Source: Schizochytrium sp. TIO01
Taxonomy: Eukaryota; Protista; Bigyra: Labyrinthulomycetes
Assembly (NCBI GenBank): GCA_004764695.1
Contig: SMSO01000037.1
Location: 2,146,747 to 2,210,746, forward strand
Length of the DNA stretch: 64,000 nucleotides
Direction: 5' to 3'
Of the stretch, positions 34,482 through 45,571 are shown in pieces. Below the pieces are notes generated by a model. The model worked only from the letters and a program-made list of their open reading frames with translations, ran no database searches and was not told the DNA's origin. Both the position numbers and the translations under genes were made by a program. Numbering within the stretch: position 1 is the first letter of the stretch; the number at the start of each line of letters is the position of its first letter.

Positions 34482-35487
34482 CGAACGAAGTAAAGTCCTG
34501 GCCACGATTGGATGATTGACCATTGGATGCTCAGGAATGAAGAAGCGAGTGGACCATCGCAAGCGAGCGACTGATGGTTGAGGGCCAGCCGTGCTAAGGA
34601 CCATGCCTCTCGGCAGCGCGTAAGCCGCCACCAAGAAGGAATCAAAATACATACTTCTGTCGCGGGAAACCATCTTGAAAGCGAAGAGAGGAAAGAAAGA
34701 CCTTGAAGAGAGAAATAAAAAAAAATAAAAAATTCAGAATTCATAGAAATGAAAAAAGAGAAAGAGAGAAGTCGCCGCACGAGCGAGCGTGCAGAACGGG
34801 ATCTCGCGAACTGCCAGAGGCGGTGGCGGCGGCGGTAGCGGAGCAGGCGGTATTGATATCGTGTGGCTGTCGTGGGTGGAGAATCACCGGCGGCGACGGT
34901 GACGGACGGTGCTTGAACTTGCACTGCGTCCGGCCGCGCCATCGATCGACTTGACATTCATTCATTGACTCATTACTCATTCAACAGAGGCTATTTGAAG
35001 AAGAGTTCAAATCTCTTTCTTTCTTTTCTTTTCTTCTCTTTCTTTTCTTTCTTTTTTTCTTTCGAATCATCGCTCCTTTCGTTCGAGTTCTCGCGGTCCC
35101 TTGATACCCTGATCCATAGATTCACATATTGCAAGCAAGCATTCTTAAAGCTGCTTCAAGGGTATTCAAAGCAAAGCGACAGTAGAACTCGGCAGGCAAC
35201 TGAGACAGTGTCGTGGATATCTCATATCTTGACGAGGAAGTTACTTCTTTTATTTCGGTGTTGTTGTTGTTGTTGATTGCTGCTGTTGTCAACTGTGACG
35301 GAGTAACACGGGATCCTGGTTCTACGATTCTGGGTTCACGATTCTGGGTTCTGCAAATTGCGATCTAGATATTGAAATACTTCGGAAACTCGTTTCAGAA
35401 GAGAACGAGAGCAACCAAGACTGAATACACACTGATTTGCAGATTGTACTTGAGTGTTTTGACCTTGGGTCAGAAAAGGCAGGCGCA

Positions 35488-38400
35488 ATGACAAGAGTCA
35501 CGCGCACACGGAGTGGTGCAGCCAAAACCGGGGACCGACAGGGCCTGCAGCTGGACGCACCGGTGTTCCGGCCGACGATTGAGGAGTTTGAGGATTTTGA
35601 GAGCTTTGTAGCCAAGATTGAAGAGGCTGGCAGCAAGTATGGGCTTGTTAAGGTGGTTCCACCCAAAGAGTGGGGCTGGAAAATGCACCCAAATCCTTTC
35701 CTTGCGCGCACACAGGAGCTCAAGCGCGGTATCAAGCCTGTAAGACAGTTCTCCAGCGGACGCAAAGGCGCGTACCGCATTGATCTTGTTGAAACTAAAA
35801 AGCGACCTGTGGGCGACTTTTGGGAGGAGTCTCTTCGCGAAGATGCCAAACGTGAGTCTCTAGTTCGCCAACCAGAGCAAGGTGTGGCCATGTGGCAAGG
35901 CAAATGGGAGTCCTCCACTACAAATGCTTCAGCTGCTCCATGCGAAGAAAAAAAAGAAATTATCGACCCTACTTTGGCGGAGGCAGCATTATCACCTGCT
36001 GGTAAAGACGAAAGTACACACCCGTCTGACAAAGAGAAGCAGGGCCCAGTCCAACCACAGCAAGTTGAAACTGGAGAGAAGGAACAACCACATGTTGCGG
36101 CGCAGGAATCTAAGCAAGCCCCGATACCTCCTCTCCGCATGGTTCTTACTGGCAACTGGGCCGCAAATCCCAAAGCACTTGACGAGGCACTACATGAACA
36201 AAAAAATGCAACAGCCTCTGCAACGATGGAAAGTGAAGATAAAGAGGCAGATGATTCTAGCCAACCATCGCTGTCCACATTCACACTAAATCTCGAGGCT
36301 TTTGACGACGAAGAGGATACTCTAGTAGATGGCGCCATGCGTTTCCGAGGCAAGGGCAGATTTATTGACCAGGACAACGATGGGGAGGTCCGAGAAGATT
36401 TTTGTGTTCTCTATCTTGTTGAACACCTGGTGGAGAACGCTCGTGCTACGGTTGAAGACTGTAGGACGAAAGAATTTGCCAAGGACTACCACCTCGAAGG
36501 CTACGGTGCTAATGGGAAAGGCATGTACCGTCTTATGGGTGAACTGAACCAAGCTCGACTGACCAAACCTTGCGAATCCGAGCCAGCATCTACATTTTGG
36601 TTATCATGTACATACTTGGACTCAACGGAGGGGGGGAGCCCTAAACGTCGCAAAGTTAACGATGAAGACACCGAATCTATCCTAGAGAAAAGTCTCGTAG
36701 AGAAGGCTCATGAAGCTCGCAAGTTACTTGAGTTTGAGCCCGAGAAGATGCAGACGCGTGTTGAAAAACAAGATCTCGACCGCCTTGAAGCTGTATTTTG
36801 GAAAGAAGTTGGGTCTCATTCTAAGCCGTCCATGTACGGTTCTGATCAAGAGGGTACTCTGTTCGGCGATGTAAAAGAATTGAACGCTGGCAAATGGAAC
36901 CTGGACAAACTCGACACGATTCTTCGGGTTGGATTTGCTCCAGGCCGGGAAGCAAAGGGTATCACCACTTCGATGCTTTATTTTGGTATGTGGCGCGCGA
37001 TGTTTGCTTGGCACACTGAAGATATGGAACTCAACAGTGTCAACTTCTTACACTACGGTGCGGCAAAATTTTGGTATGCAGTCCCTCCTGAACATGCTGG
37101 TCGTTTAGAAATTGTCTCTCGTGGTGAATTTGGCGGAGAAGCTAATATTTGTCCCGAATTCTTGCGTCATAAAAACGTCATGATGGCTCCCTCAGTTTTG
37201 ATCCGGGAAAAAATTCCTTTCGTCCGTGCGGTGCAACGCGTCGGTGAGTTCATGTTTACTTTTCCACGTGCGTACCATGGTGGCTTTAATCTTGGATTTA
37301 ATGTTGCAGAAGCATCAAACTTCGCTACACCTCGCTGGCTTACCATTGGCCGACGTGCTCGCTGGTGCAAGTGCGAGCACTGGACATTTCGGCTCGATAT
37401 TGATGACTTTGTGGAGCGCGTCCGAGCAAAAGCACCAGAACGGCTCCCACCCGGACCGTATGAAGGTGATCGGATTCTCTATCGCTATGATGCTAACAAT
37501 CTTGTGCCTTGTCCCACTCGACGTAAATCCAAGTCCAAGTCTAAGTCAGGCCACAGCTCCACACCCAAGACCATGATGCTGATTCGCGTCCCTCGTGAAG
37601 AAGCTGCCGCAGAAGAAGGTACTGAAAATCACGAACGCGTTGCCGAGGACACTGTCGAGGACACCGCTGAGGTTGACCGTGCGAATGAGCAAGGGGGTCA
37701 AGTACAGGCTGCAGGTGATAGTCAAGAGGCAGACTTGCAGGTAACTGCAAATGAAACGAGTACAAAGATTCTTGAACACTTTAACAAAATGGAAGATACA
37801 GAAAGCCGCGCAGATACTCTTCCTTCGTCACCGCATCGCAAGGCCCCAGATATGCGTACAGCTTTAATGCGTGTAATTAAGGGTAAAAACGGCGCTCCTT
37901 TCATGGTTGTGCCAGTGAATTGGGATGAGGTACCCTTCGAGCGCGCTCCATTCTATCCCGACGAAGACGACTGGTCATGGCCTCAACCTGGAGAAGTGGA
38001 TGCAACTGATGACGAGGCATGTGAAATGGTCACCCCCCCCTCTACTAAACCATCCTCGGCAAAGAAGGTCCGTCTTGAAAATGCTGTAGACAGTGACGAT
38101 GATATTCCTATGAGCAAAGAGGACCAACAGCAGCGTCGCGACCGCTGGGAGAATCTTCGCTGGACTCGTAGACAACGAATTATTGTTCGCAAAGCAAAGG
38201 TTCTCCATCAGGCGAACCCACTTGTATTTGCATACATGCTAGCACTTGTAGAGCAAGATGAGAATAGCAGCGATCCCGAGGCGGTTTCCCGTGCTATGCA
38301 ACACATTCAGCAGGGAATTCAAAACCAACAACTCCTCATGAAATCGGCAATGAATACTCATATTCCACGGCCGGTGGCCACATCAACAACTATCAGTTGC

Positions 38401-38505
38401 TTGCCCCCCGAGCGAGTCAAAATTCTTGAAGCCTTCAAGAATTCACGTGCAAAACGTCTTAAGATGCGCCGTGAACGTGCAAGGCTTGCCAAGGTGTCTA
38501 CTTAA
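35488..38505 (+). CDS. JmjN/JmjC histone lysine demethylase, KDM4/JMJD2-like
   Basis: JmjN APVFRPTIEEFEDF...GLVKVVPPKEW; JmjC MYGSD, LYFGMWRAMFAWHTED (HxE), KFWY, FLRHK, YHGGFN, AEASNFA. First ATG at 35488. Confidence 0.92.
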   Translation: MTRVTRTRSGAAKTGDRQGLQLDAPVFRPTIEEFEDFESFVAKIEEAGSKYGLVKVVPPKEWGWKMHPNPFLARTQELKRGIKPVRQFSSGRKGAYRIDLVETKKRPVGDFWEESLREDAKRESLVRQPEQGVAMWQGKWESSTTNASAAPCEEKKEIIDPTLAEAALSPAGKDESTHPSDKEKQGPVQPQQVETGEKEQPHVAAQESKQAPIPPLRMVLTGNWAANPKALDEALHEQKNATASATMESEDKEADDSSQPSLSTFTLNLEAFDDEEDTLVDGAMRFRGKGRFIDQDNDGEVREDFCVLYLVEHLVENARATVEDCRTKEFAKDYHLEGYGANGKGMYRLMGELNQARLTKPCESEPASTFWLSCTYLDSTEGGSPKRRKVNDEDTESILEKSLVEKAHEARKLLEFEPEKMQTRVEKQDLDRLEAVFWKEVGSHSKPSMYGSDQEGTLFGDVKELNAGKWNLDKLDTILRVGFAPGREAKGITTSMLYFGMWRAMFAWHTEDMELNSVNFLHYGAAKFWYAVPPEHAGRLEIVSRGEFGGEANICPEFLRHKNVMMAPSVLIREKIPFVRAVQRVGEFMFTFPRAYHGGFNLGFNVAEASNFATPRWLTIGRRARWCKCEHWTFRLDIDDFVERVRAKAPERLPPGPYEGDRILYRYDANNLVPCPTRRKSKSKSKSGHSSTPKTMMLIRVPREEAAAEEGTENHERVAEDTVEDTAEVDRANEQGGQVQAAGDSQEADLQVTANETSTKILEHFNKMEDTESRADTLPSSPHRKAPDMRTALMRVIKGKNGAPFMVVPVNWDEVPFERAPFYPDEDDWSWPQPGEVDATDDEACEMVTPPSTKPSSAKKVRLENAVDSDDDIPMSKEDQQQRRDRWENLRWTRRQRIIVRKAKVLHQANPLVFAYMLALVEQDENSSDPEAVSRAMQHIQQGIQNQQLLMKSAMNTHIPRPVATSTTISCLPPERVKILEAFKNSRAKRLKMRRERARLAKVST

Positions 38506-38883
38506 ATCGCACTAACGTTTGCTTGATATGCGCTGGCGATTATATGTCTCATTTTTATTTTTCACGAGTTACCTAGTGGTGTCAGTCGAAATTACTCGAG
38601 TTCTTTATGGCCCATCTGGATACCTGATACAATTGTAATTTCTACACCTCCTATATATACAAACGAATGCCTCGCGAACGCCCCCGCTACAACGCGACTC
38701 GCAATAGTCTCGTAGGATTCTTTCCAATCTTTCTTTATGTGATGATTTGCTTTACTTCACGGTTTTCTGTATGCGATTCAATTTTATAAACAATTTCCCT
38801 TTTCTTATCCTTATACAGTAATATTATGCCTCTTTGTACTAAGGTACCTAGGCAAGTGTCGATTGTCTACTAACCCTGGATAA

Positions 38884-38908
38884 ATTGTCTACGAAATACG
38901 TAGACAAT
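38884..38908. other. Subterminal palindrome ATTGTCTACG-N5-CGTAGACAAT (candidate transposase-binding site)
   Basis: Perfect 10-bp stem; an imperfect copy with the same 5-nt spacer at 42996-43020 and half-sites at 43223-43230 and 43236-43244. Confidence 0.7.
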
Positions 38909-39357
38909 AAAAGTTTTATCGATCGGAGAAATTATATATATATTTTTTTGTACACGTTTAAAGTGTACAACTTTTTGAGAAATAGGCCAACCCTACTACA
39001 ACTCGTCATGAATATTCGACCTTTACGACCCAAACTTTCCTTGGATGCTCCCACCATGGCACCAATTGGTCTATGAAAATTTTACGAGACGAGAAGACTT
39101 GCAAGGGGCAGAAGATGGGGTTCTGCTCTGCTTCTCCTTTAGACTTCTGGTAGTTAGGCTGGTAGTTAAGTGCTCCTGATATGTTTTGGGCGCGAACTAT
39201 GCTACTAGGCGCTCTTCTGCTTGCAATTGCGTATCCTGCCAGGGATCCTGCGCGAGTGCTGGTAGTATCTTCGACACGGTCGCCCTCCACACCTTAATGC
39301 TGCGATTCTAGTTTGGGCTTCGAGTATACAGGTATCTTTTAGCTTTTGAGTGTCAAT

Positions 39358-42300
39358 ATGCCTACACGTACGCAGGTTAAGGACTTGGTCTCAGAGTGTG
39401 GCGAAGTTTCTGATGCCTCCTCAATGTCAAGTGACGACAGTGTCGATAGTGACAATAGTGAAAGCTACATTGAAATTGAAATGTGTGGACAATCCATGTC
39501 GGTAGATCCTTCGGTCCAAGCTGATGATGCTAATGGCCAAGGTAACTGGGAATTTGATTCCTTCTCTGCCCATGGCTCCAAGTATCACGAAGGCCTTCGT
39601 GGAACTATGCGAAGTATGGACACAATCGAGCTTGAATACAGCCCACATAACATAGATCTGTTATTGAGAACTCAAATGGAAAGCGAAGTTATTCTAGCAC
39701 GAGTGCGAAAACAACTTCATATATCCAGCGAGGATAGCATTAGCCCCTTTCAAGCCATGCAAGTTTGTATCCCACCTCTCTATATCGATACCTTCTTAGA
39801 GTGGTTAAATAATGACACGAGCTCCAAATTCTCCCGTCGTGACATTCATATGTTTATCGAGGTCGAGATTTTGTGTCGAACGGCGAACCGCTCTAGTACA
39901 TTCGTTTGTAAAGGAGTACCTGACGATGCGTCCAACGCATATAGACGCGTGCGTAGCGCGATGCGGAAAGCAAGCAAAAATAACCGTGAAAAGACCAATC
40001 ATCAAAAGACATCACGAAACCTTCCATTCACAACAGCAGACAAATATCTAAAACGAATGCAGGACCTTGCAAGTAGACACTGGAATTCGCTGTTATTTGT
40101 AAATGGTGTCACGTGGGTTGATCTTGATGATGACAAACTCCCACACTCTTCATCGGACTTTGAATCAGCTGGTATCCGGCTGATCCCAACAAAAACTCAG
40201 AAAAGAAAACCAGTTGTTCATGTCGTAGCTTCTGTTGGAACTGGTGTGATTCTTCAAGGCTGGGTGGAATTTCTCCGCACAAAAGTTTCTGACATCGTGA
40301 AGAAGTCAGTTAACTTGATGTTAGAGCATCCTGACGATTTAGGCAAGGAAAGTTGCAGTCGAGATCTTACTATCTTTATTGACCGCGAATACCTGGCAAT
40401 TGCTAAGTATCAACAAGAAAACACACGAACCAACATCATCCAAATTCTACAGGATCTAAACGTATCGTTTTTAGGGACATGCAAACAGACGCGCATGTTT
40501 CCATTCCAAGATCTACTTGAAAAACCGACTCGGCAGTCATCTACACAGGCGATAGTTTGGGTAAATGGTCGAAGGAGCGCACATACTGCAAAAGTCGATG
40601 GAGAGAATCTCTATGCACTTACCTCTAGGCACGGGCAAGGAAAGGCAAGGATTGCTCGGTTGGTCACCAACAATCCAAAATTAGGCGTTCATAACTGGGT
40701 TTTTGAAGTAGGGTATGGTCAAGTTCAAAAGAATCATCCTGGTGGTGTTTCGAGGCTGGAGCACGTAGTTGCAGACCACGAACCTCTGACAGCTGAATCC
40801 TCCAATGAAGCCCGAATAGGCGCAGCGTTCCGTAATCTCGAAAGCCGAACTATCAGGTTGACACAGAAACAAGGGACTGCAGACTGGTTTTTAGCACGAC
40901 TTTTCCGCGCAACGAGCACAACCTCATTTCAATGTATGAATTTTGTTTCTGCTCCATTTATTCATTCTGAAGAGCTTCGAACAATGCATGCTCGTGTCTT
41001 GCAAATTGCAGTGCTTAATCCCATAACTGCCATTACGGTTGAAAACGCTTCTGAGAGAGTTGATCCAGATCTACCTGGCTCGCTCAAACAAAGTAGAATG
41101 AAGCGCAGACGAGTCAGTCACGGCGACAAGACAAAAGCACAATACTGGTTAAACAAGTGTAAAACAAGGGTCAACTTAGCGGCTGAATTAATGGAACTTA
41201 CTGGAGAGGTGGTTCTTCCTGAAGAGAAAAACCTTGATATCGCAGAACGCCTTGCTAGTGCGACCGCTTTAAAAATAGTGTCTACGCAAAGTTCCGTTGC
41301 TGACTCTTTGTCAATCCAGAATTTGTCTCAACATGAAAATCTGCAGCATACTCCAGTGGGATGTTCTGACACGAGTTCGGAGATATCTTTTTACCAGCGC
41401 CAGCAATGCTTTCTTCAGACCTTGATGTTGTTATGGTTCATACCGCCTTGGAGAGACGGTCTTGCACCTCACAAAAGTCCGTTACGTTTAGGCAAAGAGA
41501 ATGAAAATGTTATTACTGCAGGATTAAAGACCTTCATCTACAAGGTTTCGAGTAAGAGCATCAAAATTCACGAGATTAGACCATACGGACTTCTTGCTAA
41601 CCGAGATGTACCATTTATAGCAGATTCCCCTGATGGAGTTGCGGTCATTTCGCGTAAAGTAGGCGACGAGTACGTTATCCAAGATGCGACAGCCTTAGAA
41701 TTCAAGACTGTTACGTCGCCAGATACAATTTCTGCAGTAGCAGCACGCGTAGGTGAGCTTGGCCAGTTTGTAGAATGTCATGCAGGGTCTCTACTTTTCA
41801 AACATGCGGTCCCTGAACCTTCTTACAGGGCTCAGATCATTCATCACGCGTGTGCGTTAGATGTTTCAGAAGTTTTGCTCATCTACTCGACATCTGAGCG
41901 TGAACTTCAGGCAGTTCTTGTTGAAGTTGCACAGGCTCAACGGGACCAATGGAGAGGCTATTTAGGTGCTCTTGCAGATGAGTACATGAAGTTTGCCTAT
42001 GGAGAGCATCTCGGGACATTTCCCCGTCTTGGAAATGATTACTCGTCGTCGTATGGTTTTGCTAGAGAACACCATACAGTTGATGTTTACTTGCAGCTCT
42101 GGCGGCGGCACAATGATGATGTACTATCAAATGGGACACCGCCACCCTGTAAAAAAATATTACCGAAGTTATGCAGTGTTTGGAATCACCACATGGGAAA
42201 TGTTGATATTGTTCGGAAGACCGTCGAAGGTCGAAAGCGGCGTACCAGTCGACTGAAGCCTGCAGCTTTAGTCTGGCTTACTTACCTCGACTACACACTA

Positions 42301-42870
42301 TATAATGCATTCCGTGTATATCAACTTGCGCGTCTCGAAGCTTTTACTCCTCATGCAAAATCTTTCGATGCATGGCAGACAGCTAGGAAAAACACAACAT
42401 CATTTGTAGTGTTCTTGGAAGATTTGCACAGAGGAATGCGTTATCGATTTGATGAGAATAATCAATTCCCACTTTCCCAGAATTGTGATATTGTTGCTGC
42501 GAATCCCAATTCTGCGATTGAATTATCACCCCAAAACGATGAAGACTCATCGAAATACGTAACAAAATCAGTCCTACTTAACCTGCTTCAAGGTTTGAAA
42601 AATAATACAAACAATGAGCACACTTTATCACGCAATCAGCCTTATGGCACCCCTCCAGCAAGGAGGACATGCATTCTCTGCTGTGTTAGGTGCGAAAAAA
42701 GTCAGGATCACGTCTCTCGACGTGGGAGATCTACTACCAAGGAGTGCAAAGGCTGTGAGATACATCCAGGTCAATATGCTGCATTCTGCAAAAAGTGCTT
42801 CGATACATTTCACGAATTAGGGGCTAAGTCTATATCCAACGTACATTTTTCATTTCTGAAGGAGTTGTAA
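39358..42870 (+). CDS. piggyBac-type DDD transposase with an internal YqaJ/lambda-exonuclease-like domain and a C-terminal Cys-rich domain
   Basis: WVDLDDD (D1), IFIDREY (D2) followed by GTCKQTR, and WNHHMGNVD (D3). YqaJ motifs QGTADWFLAR, GKENE, PFIADSPDG, LEFK, YRAQ. C-terminal CILC...CKGC...FCKKCFDTFH. First ATG at 39358. Confidence 0.85.
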   Translation: MPTRTQVKDLVSECGEVSDASSMSSDDSVDSDNSESYIEIEMCGQSMSVDPSVQADDANGQGNWEFDSFSAHGSKYHEGLRGTMRSMDTIELEYSPHNIDLLLRTQMESEVILARVRKQLHISSEDSISPFQAMQVCIPPLYIDTFLEWLNNDTSSKFSRRDIHMFIEVEILCRTANRSSTFVCKGVPDDASNAYRRVRSAMRKASKNNREKTNHQKTSRNLPFTTADKYLKRMQDLASRHWNSLLFVNGVTWVDLDDDKLPHSSSDFESAGIRLIPTKTQKRKPVVHVVASVGTGVILQGWVEFLRTKVSDIVKKSVNLMLEHPDDLGKESCSRDLTIFIDREYLAIAKYQQENTRTNIIQILQDLNVSFLGTCKQTRMFPFQDLLEKPTRQSSTQAIVWVNGRRSAHTAKVDGENLYALTSRHGQGKARIARLVTNNPKLGVHNWVFEVGYGQVQKNHPGGVSRLEHVVADHEPLTAESSNEARIGAAFRNLESRTIRLTQKQGTADWFLARLFRATSTTSFQCMNFVSAPFIHSEELRTMHARVLQIAVLNPITAITVENASERVDPDLPGSLKQSRMKRRRVSHGDKTKAQYWLNKCKTRVNLAAELMELTGEVVLPEEKNLDIAERLASATALKIVSTQSSVADSLSIQNLSQHENLQHTPVGCSDTSSEISFYQRQQCFLQTLMLLWFIPPWRDGLAPHKSPLRLGKENENVITAGLKTFIYKVSSKSIKIHEIRPYGLLANRDVPFIADSPDGVAVISRKVGDEYVIQDATALEFKTVTSPDTISAVAARVGELGQFVECHAGSLLFKHAVPEPSYRAQIIHHACALDVSEVLLIYSTSERELQAVLVEVAQAQRDQWRGYLGALADEYMKFAYGEHLGTFPRLGNDYSSSYGFAREHHTVDVYLQLWRRHNDDVLSNGTPPPCKKILPKLCSVWNHHMGNVDIVRKTVEGRKRRTSRLKPAALVWLTYLDYTLYNAFRVYQLARLEAFTPHAKSFDAWQTARKNTTSFVVFLEDLHRGMRYRFDENNQFPLSQNCDIVAANPNSAIELSPQNDEDSSKYVTKSVLLNLLQGLKNNTNNEHTLSRNQPYGTPPARRTCILCCVRCEKSQDHVSRRGRSTTKECKGCEIHPGQYAAFCKKCFDTFHELGAKSISNVHFSFLKEL

Positions 42871-43738
42871 AGGTGCTCCCAGAGTTAAATAGTAAAATCT
42901 ATGTAGAGTCCAATTTTCCCGAAGCTTGATCAAGTATCCCCGATGCGACGCTTTCACAAAACCAGTTTGAAATTAATTAAGGATAATAGGGTATATTTGT
43001 CTACGTTTTATGTTGACAAAATGGAGCCATTTTTAATCGGATTTAGGCCGGTTGATTTCGTTCAAAGCCAGAATCGAAAACTCCAATTATTCATCAGCAC
43101 CATCATTTTAGAGCTCAGAGCTCGAATATGTTCTTCTTCAAGGCCAGAACTAGCAATCTGGCACAGAACTTTCAAGAATTTGAGGGATTTGCCCCTAAAC
43201 ATCAGAAATTGGTGGTGTTGAGTTGTCTACATTTGTTGTCTACGTTTTTGCGATATCCAGGGCTAATGGTTGTAACATCTCTTTTCTTGCCCATGTTTAG
43301 AAAATGTTACTCTAAGCACTGGAATGTTTTTACTTTCGTTTTTTAACCGCTGTATCTGGTGAGAGTGCTCAACAATCGTCACTGGGAGTACTAGAATGTG
43401 TCAGTATGATTGAAGTCAATTCTTTTCTTCCCCTTGACCATTTTTCGAAGGGCAAAGCGAAAACAAACAACACAGTACCTAGGTACTAATTCTCTATTCT
43501 ACTGGGAGCTTGTTTTGCTTTTCCTCTTTTTTTTATATTTTTTTTTAAAGGGAGGTTCCCAATAAAGGGATACATTGCATTACGCTACTACTAGACACCT
43601 AATCGTAGCTACGTAGCTAGAAGAAAAACACTCTGGAAGTGATCCTCCTCCAGATGAATGAGTTGCACCAGAACTCTTTTCAATTAGCTGAAAGATTGAC
43701 TTTCAAAAGTGCCACCTTGGGCACCTCGAAAGGCCGCA

Positions 43739-45571
43739 ATGGGGCTACCATCCCGGCGTGAAGTTGTGGAGATTTCTCTAGTCGCTATAGGCTGTGCCAC
43801 GGTGGCATGGGCGATGCAACAAATTAAGGCCGGCCAGCTTCTGAGCCGAGAGGCATCCGCGTTCATGGGTCTAACTACGTTTGTGGCAGCATCTTTAACA
43901 AGTGACAAATTCCGCACATCACTACCTAAGTCGTGGCTGCAGGTGTCTAGGACATGCCCTGATAATGGCATAATTTACGTACTTCTGGGACCACTTGTGA
44001 GTGCGTCTGTTCTGATGGCCTTGGCACAATGTGAATCTTCATTCATTTTGGATGATAAGATACAGTATGCTCGGGCCCTTTTCTGGGTAGTCTGGGGCAG
44101 TACAATTCGGTTTGTAATCAGAGCAGGGGAAAAATCCTTTCCTATTCTGCGACATGCTGACAACACAGATTCTTCGCCAAAGATGCGAATCATTGCAAGC
44201 CTTGTCATTGACATTCTGATTTCCACCACCAGTGGTATACAATTAGGCTTCAGTGAGGCTGGCACAGATAGAATAGGGACTTGGTTTTGTGGCTGTCTAA
44301 CCCTCTGCGCTTTGTTTCTGCAGCGTGGGCTGCTCGCACTATGGTTGCGGGGATTTCAGAAATCCTTCACTGTTGGCGAAGCATATTGCGTAGCGCTCTT
44401 AATCTCTTTTGCGATCTTAGATTTCGTGTTATTATCTGTAGAAAAGTTAGCTAGCGGGCTGTCGCTTAGGGCTCATCTGCCATTCGACCCATTTAAAGAA
44501 AGACTACCCGAATGGATTGCTCTGGAGGGTGGGTTGCTCGGAGTTCTTGCCCTACCTCTTGTCATGTCAACATTCTTACTGCGTCATGCAGTTCTCGAAA
44601 ATGAAACCGTTACAGTAGATGCTCGTGTTGAACCTCCAGTATCAGCAACCTTTCGTCGAAAACTTAGTACACCAGAAACAGCACCACTCTGGAGTTGGGA
44701 TAAAAACTCCTTCTCCATGAAAGATCTTCTTACGTTTTGGGCTGTTGTAATTGCCTGGCTTGGTGGGGTTGTTTCTATCTGGGTAAGCTTTCTTCTCAAA
44801 TGGAAGCATCCTGTTATCTTTGTGGTAGAGTATGTTTTCTCTTCTACCGTGCACCTAGGCATTCTAGGATACTGGATATTAGCACTCAGCGTCGGACTTC
44901 CTTGTATTCATGTTGTAGCGTCTCGAGCTCAATGGCCGTTGATTATTACTCGCAAACTTTATCATTTGCTTGCACTTGCTATGTTTGCTCCTGCTATTGT
45001 CTCTGCTCCAACGTTTCTGGCCTTCTCCTTTGGAATTGCCATGGCGCTGCTGTTCTTCATTGAGCTTATCCGCATTTGTCGTGTGCCGCCCTTTGGCAAC
45101 TGGATTCATGTGTTTCTCCGCAGCTACACAGACTCGCGAGATGAGGGAACGACTATTTTGACACATATTTACCTCTTGTTAGGTTGTGCTTTACCTTTGT
45201 GGTTATATGCCGATATTCCTATTTTCTCATCTCGCGCTGCTCAATTCGCAGGCCTGGCCATTCTGGGAGCAGGCGATGCCGCTGGTGCTATCATTGGATC
45301 TCAATTTGGCAAATACTCATGGCCAGGCGGCAGGAAAACACTCGAAGGTACAATAGCAGCAGTTTGTGCCTCTCTTGGCCTCATGGGTTTTCTTTTGAGC
45401 TGGGCTGTTGCAGGTTGTGAGCGTGATGTCTTCAACACTTTGGCCCTTGTCTGTGCGACCTTGCTCACATGTCTGCTTGAAGCCTTCACGAAGCAGATAG
45501 ACAACCTGACACTACCCATGTTCTATGCCGCTCTTTTAGTCCTGCCGGCTGTAGATCTGCATATAGCCTAA
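43739..45571 (+). CDS. DOLK: Dolichol kinase
   Basis: Polytopic membrane protein with SFTVGEA, RKLYH, DSRD, LTHIYLLLGCALP, GDAAGAIIG...WPGGRKTLEG, QIDNL. ATG at 43739. Confidence 0.92.
   Translation: MGLPSRREVVEISLVAIGCATVAWAMQQIKAGQLLSREASAFMGLTTFVAASLTSDKFRTSLPKSWLQVSRTCPDNGIIYVLLGPLVSASVLMALAQCESSFILDDKIQYARALFWVVWGSTIRFVIRAGEKSFPILRHADNTDSSPKMRIIASLVIDILISTTSGIQLGFSEAGTDRIGTWFCGCLTLCALFLQRGLLALWLRGFQKSFTVGEAYCVALLISFAILDFVLLSVEKLASGLSLRAHLPFDPFKERLPEWIALEGGLLGVLALPLVMSTFLLRHAVLENETVTVDARVEPPVSATFRRKLSTPETAPLWSWDKNSFSMKDLLTFWAVVIAWLGGVVSIWVSFLLKWKHPVIFVVEYVFSSTVHLGILGYWILALSVGLPCIHVVASRAQWPLIITRKLYHLLALAMFAPAIVSAPTFLAFSFGIAMALLFFIELIRICRVPPFGNWIHVFLRSYTDSRDEGTTILTHIYLLLGCALPLWLYADIPIFSSRAAQFAGLAILGAGDAAGAIIGSQFGKYSWPGGRKTLEGTIAAVCASLGLMGFLLSWAVAGCERDVFNTLALVCATLLTCLLEAFTKQIDNLTLPMFYAALLVLPAVDLHIA

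What the first reader, a model, noticed from the sequence alone, without database searches (positions are those of the whole stretch)
39358..42870. piggyBac transposase with a YqaJ/lambda-exonuclease domain inserted inside its DDD catalytic core
Seen: piggyBac landmarks in order, namely D1 (DLDDD, ~40126), D2 (IFIDREY, 40381) with GTCKQTR, D3 (WNHHMGNVD, 42205; cf. YNxxMGGVD) and the terminal Cys-rich domain. D2 and D3 are about 608 codons apart, against about 100 in canonical piggyBac. The extra sequence holds an ordered set of YqaJ/lambda-exonuclease motifs: QGTADWFLAR..RATST (~40870), LGKENE, GLL...PFIADSPDG (~41623), LEFK (~41698) and YRAQ (~41824), with the PD-(D/E)xK residues retained. 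Known: canonical piggyBac excises precisely through hairpins and needs no exonuclease; YqaJ-type nucleases accompany some other eukaryotic DNA transposons such as ISL2EU. Inference: a two-nuclease transposase that may resect the donor break or process ends for recombinational repair, for example restoring the donor copy. The unbroken ORF and intact ends suggest recent activity.
Basis: partly seen in the sequence, partly recalled or inferred. Interest (0 to 1): 0.9.

Follow-up and report, generated by a model that had tools for sequence, protein, structure and literature searches.

The report
piggyBac transposon with built-in exonuclease
This is an intact piggyBac-type jumping gene whose cutting enzyme has a complete second DNA-degrading enzyme (lambda-exonuclease type) spliced into the middle of its catalytic core. 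A large unannotated protein family shares this design, and no paper I could search describes it.

Summary
Window 39358-42870 (+) is one unbroken 1170-codon ORF inside a 4389-bp element (38874-43262). The element has piggyBac-type ends (CCCTGGATA...TATCCAGGG) and a perfect 4-bp duplication, CTAA.

- **piggyBac part:** a profile of 149 relatives hits the piggyBat and T. ni piggyBac transposases (E 7e-15, 6.5e-11). The match comes in two blocks that flank about 450 extra residues. The AlphaFold model (pLDDT 83) matches piggyBac at Z 24.3 across residues 106-1036.
- **Inserted part:** residues about 466-917 match lambda exonuclease at Z 12.6-13.9, covering about 200 of its 226 residues.
- **Conservation:** D257/D342/D950 and R514, E716, D759, E781, K783, Q826 are conserved down to about 18% identity. 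All 47 long relatives share the same nested order.
- **Targets:** nine full copies in this genome have perfect 4-bp duplications of NTAN. Only one of them is TTAA.

What the exonuclease does is inferred. I favour 5'-strand trimming at the breaks made by the DDD site. The two candidate roles are removing old-site overhangs from the excised element and resecting the donor break for homologous repair.

The scan had already reported this design on other DNA of this genome, a 40%-identical subfamily. This is a second lineage, with one intact copy and one frameshifted copy.

Novelty: new variant of a known kind.

The parts
38870..38873 (.). Left target-site duplication, CTAA
   Evidence: Identical 4-mer at 43263-43266. 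The second genomic copy (G000:C33) has CTAG on both sides.
38874..43262 (+). Whole transposon, 4389 bp
   Evidence: Similarity to the C33 copy (97.4-98.1% by BLAST) starts and stops at these ends. A scan for CCC..GGG ends plus a duplicated 4-mer returns only this pair.
38874..38882 (+). Left terminal inverted repeat, CCCTGGATA
   Evidence: Perfect 9-bp inverted match with 43254-43262. piggyBac-type CCC...GGG termini.
38885..38907 (.). Left subterminal TTGTCTAC repeats, an inverted pair. Likely transposase binding sites (inferred).
   Evidence: 8 matches in the window against 1.9 expected. 6 of them lie at the element ends (inverted repeats I1/I2).
39358..42870 (+). Transposase ORF, 1170 aa plus stop
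   Evidence: AlphaFold2 model has mean pLDDT 82.9 and pTM 0.81.
39358..39537 (+). Disordered acidic/Ser-rich N-terminus (aa 1-60)
   Evidence: pLDDT 30-52. T. ni piggyBac also has a disordered N-terminal ~110 residues (PMC7351741).
39538..40503 (+). piggyBac N-part (aa 61-382): helical DNA-binding/dimerisation part 1 and RNase H strands 1-5, with D1 = D257 (40126-40128) and D2 = D342 (40381-40383)
   Evidence: Profile stretch 30-297 aligns to piggyBat 76-356, including lfiDRgY...flgT against iYMDNYY...CGT. VIA alignment to 6x67 starts at model residue 106. D257 is conserved in 56 of 58 and D342 in 62 of 67 aligned sequences.
40504..40710 (+). Beta-stranded piggyBac-type insertion domain (aa 383-451)
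   Evidence: Six strands follow beta-5 in the model. This is the same topological place as the piggyBac insertion domain, residues 372-433 (PMC7351741). The correspondence is inferred from secondary structure and the HMM alignment.
40789..42132 (+). Nested lambda-exonuclease/YqaJ-type PD-(D/E)xK module (aa 478-925). Key residues: R514 (40897), E716 (41503), D759 (41632), E781 (41698), K783 (41704), Q826 (41833).
   Evidence: Domain model pLDDT 84.7. VIA-align against 48,161 chains gives lambda exonuclease 3slp Z 13.9 (199 of 226 residues aligned), LHK-Exo Z 12.9, mimivirus R354 Z 11.3, EBV alkaline nuclease 9.7 and 3k93 9.7. Foldseek hits lambda exonuclease at E 5e-4. The profile hits R354 at 5.7e-4 and LHK-Exo at 0.019. 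The listed residues are conserved in at least 90% of 39 relatives.
41143..41256 (+). Degenerate SAP-like motif (aa 596-633) in the disordered loop inside the exonuclease module
   Evidence: It aligns with the Pfam SAP hit of relative P0031 (6.6e-9, 35.6 bits) and of P0006. SAP is found in 9 of 39 relatives. This protein itself has no Pfam SAP hit, and pLDDT is low here.
42133..42465 (+). piggyBac C-part of the core (aa 926-1036): return strand, WNHHMGNVD helix with D3 = D950 (42205-42207), and helical DNA-binding part 2
   Evidence: Profile 657-825 aligns to piggyBac 433-594 and piggyBat 411-577; WNkckGgvD matches YNQTKGGVD/YNKHMKGVD. VIA alignment to 6x67 ends at model residue 1036. W942, N943 and D950 are at least 90% conserved.
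42664..42816 (+). C-terminal Cys-rich domain (aa 1103-1153)
   Evidence: C1105, C1130, C1133, C1144 and C1147 are invariant; C1108 and H1152 are at least 90% conserved. The region aligns to the piggyBat/piggyBac Cys-rich domain. Pfam zf-Tnp_2 is found in 4 of 39 relatives, best E 9e-4.
42997..43243 (.). Right subterminal TTGTCTAC repeats (42997, 43223, 43236)
43254..43262 (+). Right terminal inverted repeat, TATCCAGGG
43263..43266 (.). Right target-site duplication, CTAA

Best explanation
Window 38874-43262 is an autonomous DNA transposon of the piggyBac superfamily. Its single 1170-aa protein is a piggyBac DDD transposase. It has a helical DNA-binding domain, an RNase H-like core with D257/D342/D950, a beta-stranded insertion domain and a C-terminal Cys-rich domain. 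A complete lambda-exonuclease/YqaJ-type PD-(D/E)xK nuclease (aa ~478-925) is nested in it at the C-terminal edge of the insertion domain, just before the helix that carries D3. The nuclease in turn holds a SAP-type DNA-binding loop.

Shown: both folds, conservation of both active sites, the piggyBac-type ends, 4-bp duplications, and mobility (copies at different sites).

Inferred mechanism: the DDD site does the usual piggyBac chemistry of nick, hairpin, hairpin opening and strand transfer. This leaves 5'-phosphorylated 4-nt overhangs on the excised element and on the donor flanks. The tethered 5'-to-3' exonuclease then degrades those 5' strands in cis.

I favour this main role at about 35%: it removes the old-site overhang from the excised element. 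This family inserts at NTAN rather than only TTAA, so an overhang copied from the old site would mismatch the new target. It has to be trimmed before fill-in and ligation. Resection of the donor break comes next at about 30% (see rivals). The two roles do not exclude each other.
For: - **Architecture, by sequence:** the profile hits piggyBat 9c0f at E 7.1e-15 and piggyBac 6x67 at 6.5e-11. The matches fall in two blocks either side of the insert. R354 scores 5.7e-4 and LHK-Exo 0.019 within the insert.
- **Architecture, by structure:** the full model has pLDDT 82.9. VIA gives piggyBac Z 24.3 (369 residues aligned, model 106-1036), piggyBat Z 21.1 and lambda exonuclease Z 12.6-12.8 (model 466-917). 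The domain model gives lambda exonuclease Z 13.9 and LHK-Exo Z 12.9.
- **Pfam in relatives:** DDE_Tnp_1_7 at 2.4e-10, zf-Tnp_2, SAP at 6.6e-9 and YqaJ at 0.006.
- **Family:** 47 of 47 long relatives have the order N-exo-C, and none has N-C alone. Both catalytic sets are at least 90% conserved.
- **Ends:** CCCTGGATA/TATCCAGGG with CTAA duplicated here and CTAG at the C33 copy.
- **Sister subfamily:** 7 copies 99.96-99.98% identical, each with an intact 1176-codon frame, at different sites. Their TSDs are ATAT, TTAT, TTAA, CTAA, TTAT, ATAG and TTAG.
- **For trimming:** all 9 TSD pairs are perfect although they comprise 7 different sequences. The central TA is invariant. W942/N943 are conserved; they correspond to piggyBac Y439/N440, which contact T-3 and A-2 of TTAA (PMC7351741). 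The insertion domain that hosts the exonuclease lines the target-DNA channel (PMC7351741). R514 fits the position of the 5'-phosphate-binding Arg of lambda exonuclease. That motif correspondence rests on my own knowledge of lambda exonuclease.
Against: - No biochemical data exist; nuclease activity and polarity are inferred from fold and residues.
- Lambda exonuclease and LHK-Exo act as toroidal trimers, an arrangement a nested domain in a piggyBac dimer may not form.
- Host flap nucleases could trim 4-nt overhangs without help, so perfect TSDs do not show who trims.
- Only 9 insertions from one genome were scored.
- I could not get ends of relatives from other organisms or of canonical piggyBac elements in this genome, so the link between exonuclease and relaxed targets is uncontrolled.
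- Lambda-exonuclease-like nucleases also occur in ISL2EU and KolobokE elements (PMC4122938, PMC9587614). This argues for a role not tied to piggyBac overhangs.
- This protein itself reaches no Pfam threshold.
Confidence: 0.8

Rival explanations
1. Same architecture, different main role for the exonuclease. It resects the two donor flanks after excision and destroys their complementary 4-nt overhangs. Seamless re-ligation is then blocked and the break is repaired by homologous recombination from the sister chromatid. This restores the donor copy and makes transposition effectively replicative.
For: Canonical piggyBac excision is seamless because the donor overhangs are complementary (PMC7351741). 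A 5'-to-3' exonuclease is the classic first step of recombinational repair. Lambda-exonuclease-like nucleases were acquired independently by ISL2EU and KolobokE transposons (PMC4122938, PMC9587614), which suggests a general benefit. The sister subfamily reached 7 near-identical copies.
Against: Donor flanks leave the transpososome after hairpin formation, so a tethered domain has less access to them (inference from PMC7351741). No annealing protein is encoded in the element. No footprint or conversion data are available here. This role does not explain the relaxed NTAN targets.
Confidence: 0.3
2. The PD-(D/E)xK domain acts as an endonuclease that cuts the second (5') strand at the transposon ends, as TnsA does beside TnsB in Tn7. 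It would replace the piggyBac hairpin step.
For: The PD-(D/E)xK fold with an intact D/E/K site. Relatives such as R354, Cas4, Dna2 and MGME1 appear among the structural matches. R354 is described as a dual nuclease in the abstract of PMC6137704 (listed).
Against: The closest structural matches are processive 5'-to-3' exonucleases (lambda exonuclease, LHK-Exo), not restriction-like endonucleases. The piggyBac residues around the hairpin/TTAA pocket (W942, N943) are conserved. The 4-bp duplications and CCC/GGG ends are as in hairpin-forming piggyBac.
Confidence: 0.08
3. The nested nuclease no longer acts in transposition. It is a structural or DNA-binding spacer, or it acts on other DNA or RNA.
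For: Three single-copy paralogues in the same genome keep long ORFs with the exonuclease residues replaced. The domain can therefore persist without catalysis.
Against: Those paralogues also lost DDD residues and the piggyBac ends, so they are not transposons. In elements with ends, all exonuclease catalytic residues are at least 90% conserved alongside the DDD triad.
Confidence: 0.05
4. Artefact: a YqaJ-carrying element inserted into a piggyBac gene, or a mis-assembly, giving a false fusion.
For: None found.
Against: One continuous frame. The same order appears in 47 long relatives at 18-40% identity from independent sources. The model packs all parts with pTM 0.81. The same stretch is held by public runs from 11 studies.
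Confidence: 0.01

Closest known systems
piggyBac superfamily transposases (T. ni piggyBac, PDB 6x67; piggyBat, PDB 9c0f)
   Same: DDD triad on an RNase H-like core. Helical DNA-binding/dimerisation domain split around the core. Beta-stranded insertion domain after strand 5. YN..G.VD-type D3 motif (here WNHHMGNVD). C-terminal Cys-rich domain. CCC...GGG termini and 4-bp duplications with central TA (PMC7351741).
   Different: About 450 extra residues forming a second nuclease between the insertion domain and D3 (D2-D3 is 608 aa against 101 aa in T. ni piggyBac, D346-D447). Targets are NTAN, with only 1 of 9 being TTAA. The sequence is too divergent for Pfam PF13843 to detect on its own.
Lambda exonuclease / YqaJ / alkaline exonuclease family (PDB 3slp, 3syy, 3k93; mimivirus R354, 5yet)
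   Same: Whole-domain structural match: Z 13.9 with 199 of 226 residues aligned. The motifs W..R...T-S, G..NE, SPDG, ExK and Y/R..Q are present and conserved.
   Different: It is not a free-standing protein but is nested in another enzyme. A ~150-residue disordered loop with a SAP-type motif splits its N-terminal helix region from the core. The oligomeric state is unknown. The best Pfam YqaJ score in the family is below the threshold (17.2 bits against 22).
KolobokE and ISL2EU transposons (cut-and-paste elements with a lambda-exonuclease/YqaJ nuclease)
   Same: A DDD/E transposase is combined with a PD-(D/E)xK lambda-exonuclease-like nuclease in one element (PMC9587614, PMC4122938).
   Different: In those elements the nuclease lies downstream of the transposase domain (KolobokE) or in a separate ORF (ISL2EU). 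It is not inside the catalytic core, and the superfamilies are different.
Sister subfamily in the same genome (P0001; G000 loci L004-L010), already reported by this scan
   Same: Identical domain order, the same CCCTGG termini, 4-bp NTAN duplications, and both active sites intact.
   Different: Only 40% protein identity. It has 7 near-identical copies of 4.49 kb, against one intact and one frameshifted copy for the window's subfamily.

Membership tests
piggyBac superfamily | RNase H-like DDD catalytic core homologous to piggyBac transposase | tested here: met
   Profile against PDB gives piggyBat E 7.1e-15 and piggyBac 6.5e-11. VIA gives Z 24.3 and 21.1. D257, D342 and D950 are conserved.
piggyBac superfamily | This protein passes Pfam PF13843 (DDE_Tnp_1_7) | tested here: not met
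   No Pfam hit at E up to 1 for this sequence. 4 of 39 relatives hit PF13843, best 2.4e-10. This reflects the sensitivity limit of the model, not a missing fold.
piggyBac superfamily | C-terminal Cys-rich domain | tested here: met
   Conserved Cys/His pattern, aligned to the piggyBat and piggyBac Cys-rich domains. zf-Tnp_2 is found in 4 of 39 relatives.
piggyBac superfamily | Terminal inverted repeats beginning CCC and ending GGG | tested here: met
   CCCTGGATA...TATCCAGGG in the window and in the C33 copy; CCCTGGCTA...TAGCCAGGG in the sister subfamily.
piggyBac superfamily | 4-bp target-site duplication | tested here: met
   9 of 9 full copies have perfect 4-bp duplications.
piggyBac superfamily | TTAA-specific insertion | tested here: not met
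   The duplications are CTAA, CTAG, ATAT, TTAT (twice), TTAA, CTAA, ATAG and TTAG. The consensus is NTAN, and only 1 of 9 is TTAA. Sample size is small.
Lambda exonuclease / YqaJ (PD-(D/E)xK) | Lambda-exonuclease-type fold over the whole domain | tested here: met
   3slp Z 13.9 (rmsd 3.4, 199 of 226 aligned), 3syy Z 12.9, 5yet Z 11.3, 3k93 Z 9.7. Foldseek probability 1.00.
Lambda exonuclease / YqaJ (PD-(D/E)xK) | Catalytic Asp, Glu and Lys (SPDG ... ExK) | tested here: met
   D759, E781 and K783 are present and at least 90% conserved in 39 relatives. They align with the R354 SPDG...EIK motif.
Lambda exonuclease / YqaJ (PD-(D/E)xK) | 5'-phosphate-binding Arg in the N-terminal W..R...TAS motif | tested here: inconclusive
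   R514, in DWFLARLFRATST, is at least 90% conserved. Its equivalence to lambda exonuclease Arg28 rests on motif spacing recalled from knowledge, not on a residue-level superposition.
Lambda exonuclease / YqaJ (PD-(D/E)xK) | Passes Pfam PF09588 (YqaJ) | tested here: not met
   No hit for this protein. 2 of 39 relatives hit below the cut-off (E 0.006; 17.2 bits against 22).
Lambda exonuclease / YqaJ (PD-(D/E)xK) | Toroidal trimer and processive 5'-to-3' exonuclease activity | not testable with these tools
   Needs biochemistry or an experimental structure.
SAP domain | Passes Pfam PF02037 | tested here: not met
   No hit for this protein. aa 596-633 aligns with the SAP hits of P0031 (35.6 bits against a cut-off of 23.9) and P0006. 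9 of 39 relatives hit SAP.

The most novel reading that the evidence does not exclude
The built-in exonuclease changes what a piggyBac element can do. By removing the 5'-phosphorylated 4-nt overhangs it would free the element from strict TTAA targeting. It could also block seamless donor re-ligation, so the donor copy is restored by recombination. The result would be an effectively replicative piggyBac with relaxed targets. The catalytically dead, TIR-less paralogues in the same genome would then be domesticated descendants of this two-nuclease enzyme.
Probability: 0.35. Interest if true: 0.85.

Novelty: new variant of a known kind. Interest (0 to 1): 0.72.

Why it matters
piggyBac is the textbook 'seamless' cut-and-paste transposon and a major genome-engineering tool. 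It is thought to need no nuclease other than its DDD site and no DNA synthesis. Here a natural, apparently mobile lineage has a complete 5'-to-3' exonuclease fold spliced into the insertion domain that lines the target-DNA channel, and it inserts at NTAN instead of TTAA. This makes two open questions directly testable with ordinary excision and integration assays and point mutants:
- how transposons bias the repair of the breaks they make;
- what fixes piggyBac's TTAA specificity.

It also defines a family of at least several hundred proteins (483 representatives at E<=1e-3) that automatic annotation leaves as 'hypothetical'. In addition, it shows an unusual three-level domain nesting: core, then insertion domain, then exonuclease, then SAP.

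Tried and rejected
- **Pfam and PDB sequence search with the single protein:** no family and no meaningful hit. Only the family profile worked.
- **The search for homologous proteins with the exonuclease core alone (aa 687-903):** nothing. This is a word-index limit.
- **hhalign of the family profile against single sequences:** uninformative against a canonical piggyBac-domain ORF and a stand-alone YqaJ ORF of this genome.
- **The search for related loci:** the two alignments had no stretch conserved enough to search with. The single-protein scans of metagenome and viral contigs found no relative. I therefore have no ends or duplications from other organisms.
- **TIR search around three divergent paralogues and three canonical piggyBac-domain ORFs:** no piggyBac-type ends. 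No in-genome TTAA control was available.
- **A third 'end' match at G000:C31:7786477:** proved unrelated.
- **Expression:** not shown. One 3912-nt contig (39159-43006, inside the TIRs) in a run guessed to be RNA is transcript-like. However, it is the frameshifted C33-type variant, and the run's nature is a guess.
- **Complex prediction:** not used. A full-length dimer or an exonuclease trimer exceeds its size limit.
- **Literature:** five of seven text searches sought a prior description. They combined piggyBac or DNA transposons with YqaJ, lambda exonuclease, Cas4/RecB, exonuclease domain, oomycete/diatom or stramenopiles. None found a description of this architecture. Repbase and Dfam could not be searched.

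Full report
**Observation.** The region holds one open frame, 39346-42870 on the + strand, 1170 codons from the first ATG at 39358.
- D257 in DLDDDK (40126);
- D342 in IFIDREY (40381);
- GTCKQT (aa 373-378);
- D950 in WNHHMGNVD (42205);
- a Cys/His-rich tail (aa 1103-1153).

Between D2 and D3 lie QGTADWFLARLFRATST, LGKENE, PFIADSPDG, LEFK and YRAQ. D2 and D3 are 608 residues apart. Pfam hmmscan and a PDB sequence search with the single protein find nothing. The motifs alone would therefore have been a weak basis.

**Relatives.** An exhaustive HMMER search of 1.84 billion cluster representatives gives 483 relatives at E<=1e-3 and 39 at E<=1e-30. I cut the family into three modules: N (aa 60-480), exonuclease (481-925) and C (926-1155). 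Searched with these, all 47 long relatives show N-exo-C in that order. None has N-C without the middle module. In 39 full-length relatives at 18-38% identity, these residues are invariant or at least 90% conserved:
- D342, R343, W942, N943 and D950;
- Q505, W510, R514, E716, S757, D759, E781, K783, R824 and Q826;
- the Cys/His of the tail.

D257 is D in 56 of 58 aligned sequences. Both active sites are thus kept together over a long evolutionary span.

**What the parts are, by sequence.** A profile of 149 family members searched against all PDB sequences hits piggyBat transposase (9c0f, E 7.1e-15) and T. ni piggyBac (6x67, E 6.5e-11). Each match has two separate stretches. One covers the N-part up to the D2/GT motif. 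The other begins at the D3 motif and runs through the Cys-rich domain. Inside the gap, the same profile hits two nucleases of the lambda-exonuclease type: mimivirus R354 (5.7e-4; GLL..pFlatSPDGv...lEiK) and LHK-Exo (0.019). Scanning the relatives one by one against Pfam gives these hits:

| Pfam family | Relatives hit (of 39) | Best E-value |
|---|---|---|
| DDE_Tnp_1_7 | 4 | 2.4e-10 |
| zf-Tnp_2 | 4 | 9e-4 |
| SAP | 9 | 6.6e-9 |
| YqaJ | 2 | 0.006 (below cut-off) |

The SAP hits of P0031 and P0006 align to aa 596-633 of the window protein. This lies in the disordered loop inside the exonuclease module.

**By structure.** AlphaFold2 with the family alignment gives a confident full-length model: mean pLDDT 82.9, pTM 0.81. 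It is disordered at aa 1-49, 570-670 and 1041-1069. Foldseek ranks piggyBac first (E 1e-6), then Tn5 transposase, then lambda exonuclease. A second look with VIA-align gives:
- piggyBac 6x67 at Z 24.3, with 369 residues aligned, model 106-1036 against chain 117-519;
- piggyBat at Z 21.1;
- lambda exonuclease at Z 12.6-12.8 for model 466-917 against chain 2-226.

The piggyBac match therefore bridges the exonuclease, which is the definition of a nested domain. A separate model of aa 478-925(930) has pLDDT 84.7. It was compared with 48,161 PDB representatives without any Foldseek pre-filter:

| Match | Z | Note |
|---|---|---|
| Lambda exonuclease 3slp | 13.9 | rmsd 3.4, 199 of 226 aligned |
| LHK-Exo | 12.9 | 180 of 194 aligned |
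| R354 | 11.3 | |
| EBV alkaline nuclease | 9.7 | |
| YqaJ-type phage exonuclease 3k93 | 9.7 | |

Dna2, MGME1, Cas4 and RecE follow. The language-model atlas puts the same stretch nearest to YqaJ and viral alkaline-exonuclease clusters, at lead-only scores of 0.82-0.84.

**Where exactly it is nested.** In T. ni piggyBac the catalytic domain (263-457) is interrupted after strand 5 by a beta-stranded insertion domain (372-433). The hairpin loops of that domain line the target-DNA channel and contact TTAA. D447 sits on the following helix (PMC7351741). In the model, strand 5 (aa 370-375) is followed by six strands (383-451), then the exonuclease, then one strand (931-936) and the helix with D950. 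The HMM aligns piggyBac 433-447 to aa ~936-950. I infer that the exonuclease sits at the C-terminal edge of the insertion domain. This gives three levels of nesting: core, insertion domain, exonuclease, SAP loop.

**It is a transposon.** The window copy and a second copy on G000:C33 are 97.4-98.1% identical by BLAST from 38870 to 43265 and unrelated beyond. The element is 38874-43262 (4389 bp), with termini CCCTGGATA...TATCCAGGG. It is flanked by CTAA/CTAA here and CTAG/CTAG on C33. TTGTCTAC occurs 8 times in the window against 1.9 expected, and 6 of these lie at the element ends.

The C33 copy differs from the window copy as follows:
- 74 substitutions, 1.3% in the ORF against 3.1% outside it;
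- frameshifts of +1 at 39704, +2 at 41030 and +1 at 41134;
- a 66-bp in-frame insertion.

The window therefore holds the only intact copy of this subfamily. Fragments at 52-92% protein identity lie elsewhere in the genome.

A sister subfamily (40% protein identity) has seven copies that are 99.96-99.98% identical over about 4.49 kb, each with an intact 1176-codon frame. Their termini are CCCTGGCTA...TAGCCAGGG and their duplications are ATAT, TTAT, TTAA, CTAA, TTAT, ATAG and TTAG. Earlier notes of this scan describe that sister subfamily on other DNA of this genome with the same reading. I treated those notes as leads and re-derived everything here.

**Public runs.** The stretch is held by runs from 11 studies under ten coded organism labels. 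Laid contigs show several things:
- one contig crosses the right junction at this locus (X2);
- other flanks indicate other insertion sites, including the C33 flank (X6);
- a 3912-nt contig lies wholly inside the TIRs (39159-43006) in a run guessed to be RNA (X17).

The X17 contig carries the C33-type frameshifts, so it is at most a hint of transcription of the broken copy.

**Targets.** All nine full copies have perfect 4-bp duplications. The consensus is NTAN, and only one is TTAA. In piggyBac, N440 reads A-2 and T-3 sits in a pocket that includes Y439. Integration occurs overwhelmingly at TTAA, which the authors attribute to a hydrogen bond between the two outer target bases T0T and A3T (PMC7351741). 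Here the equivalent W942 and N943 are near-invariant, which fits an invariant central TA with free outer positions.

**Mechanism (inferred).** piggyBac chemistry leaves 5'-phosphorylated 4-nt overhangs on the excised element, copied from the old site, and on both donor flanks. With TTAA everywhere, these overhangs pair and only ligation is needed. With NTAN targets, the element's old-site overhang will usually mismatch the new target at the outer bases. If such flaps were simply ligated, the left and right duplications would often differ, yet 9 of 9 are perfect across 7 different sequences. The flaps are therefore removed and the gap is copied from the target. A tethered 5'-to-3' exonuclease beside the target channel is well placed to do this, and I put this at about 35%.

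Resection of the donor flanks would destroy the cohesive ends and channel repair into recombination, restoring the donor copy. Independent acquisitions of similar nucleases by ISL2EU and KolobokE elements favour this rival (PMC4122938, PMC9587614). The two roles are compatible. Second-strand cleavage in the manner of TnsA (~8%) and a non-catalytic role (~5%) are less likely. An assembly or nested-insertion artefact is excluded by the family-wide architecture.

**Comparison and novelty.** By fold, active site, Cys-rich domain, termini and 4-bp duplications, this is a member of the piggyBac superfamily. It fails two customary criteria: TTAA specificity and the Pfam threshold for the single sequence. 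The inserted module is a lambda-exonuclease/YqaJ-type PD-(D/E)xK nuclease by fold and residues, although no member passes the Pfam YqaJ cut-off. Known transposons with such a nuclease carry it downstream of the transposase or in a separate ORF, not inside the catalytic core. Searches of about 8.4 million full texts found no description of this design. Repbase and Dfam were not searchable, so prior deposition of consensus sequences cannot be excluded. I rate it a new variant of a known kind.

**Limits.**
- Scans of metagenome and viral contigs found nothing, so the taxonomic range and the ends of foreign relatives were not examined. The only taxon hint I have is 'Oomycota' for the nearest atlas cluster.
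- No activity, oligomeric state or expression is shown.

Noticed in passing
L024:2740-6540 (G000:C6), L025:2589-6515 (G000:C30, = P0018), L026:2848-6585 (G000:C30, = P0140): These are three single-copy paralogues of the piggyBac+exonuclease family. Each has an intact 1246-1309-aa ORF but no CCC/GGG ends or duplications. Catalytic residues of both nucleases are replaced (for example ExK to KIN or HVH, and D3 or D2 lost), while the Cys-rich domain is kept. They look like domesticated, catalytically dead derivatives.
   Followed up: partly
L032:4967-7924 (G000:C31), L033:5691-8228 and L034:5635-8814 (G000:C13): These ORFs of 986, 846 and 1060 aa hit canonical Pfam DDE_Tnp_1_7 (E 5e-32, 3e-20 and 2e-9; the third matches only the first 95 of 349 profile positions). 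In the first two the Pfam match is contiguous, so they carry no exonuclease insert. No piggyBac-type ends were detectable. They may be PGBD-like host genes.
   Followed up: partly
G000:C36:4088765-4089157 (L031:1288-2571, minus strand): A stand-alone YqaJ-domain ORF of 428 aa (PF09588, E 4e-22) lies on the same contig as the window, about 1.9 Mb away. Its relation to the nested module was not resolved (hhalign was uninformative).
   Followed up: partly
window 38863-38870: A further TTGTCTAC copy lies in the left flank and overlaps the first base of the CTAA duplication. The C33 copy has no such flank. This may be chance or a target preference.
   Followed up: no
window 39159-43006 (run X17): A single 3912-nt contig lies wholly inside the TIRs, in a run guessed to be RNA. 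It carries the frameshifts of the C33-type copy. It looks transcript-like but is unproven.
   Followed up: partly
window 39409-41680 (run X6): One contig joins 39409 to 41680, skipping 2270 bp, with only 29 letters on the shorter side. It may be an internally deleted derivative in another strain. The evidence is weak.
   Followed up: no
window 35437-38505 and 43709-45571: The element sits between two long intron-free ORFs. One is 1022 aa with JmjC-like motifs by eye. The other is a 620-aa multi-pass membrane protein. Neither was searched.
   Followed up: no
L011 (G000:C34:602119-608223): This is an older copy of the sister subfamily at 97.6% DNA identity. Its ORF is shortened to 1054 aa, the left end is flanked by ATAA, and the right terminus is degraded.
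   Followed up: partly
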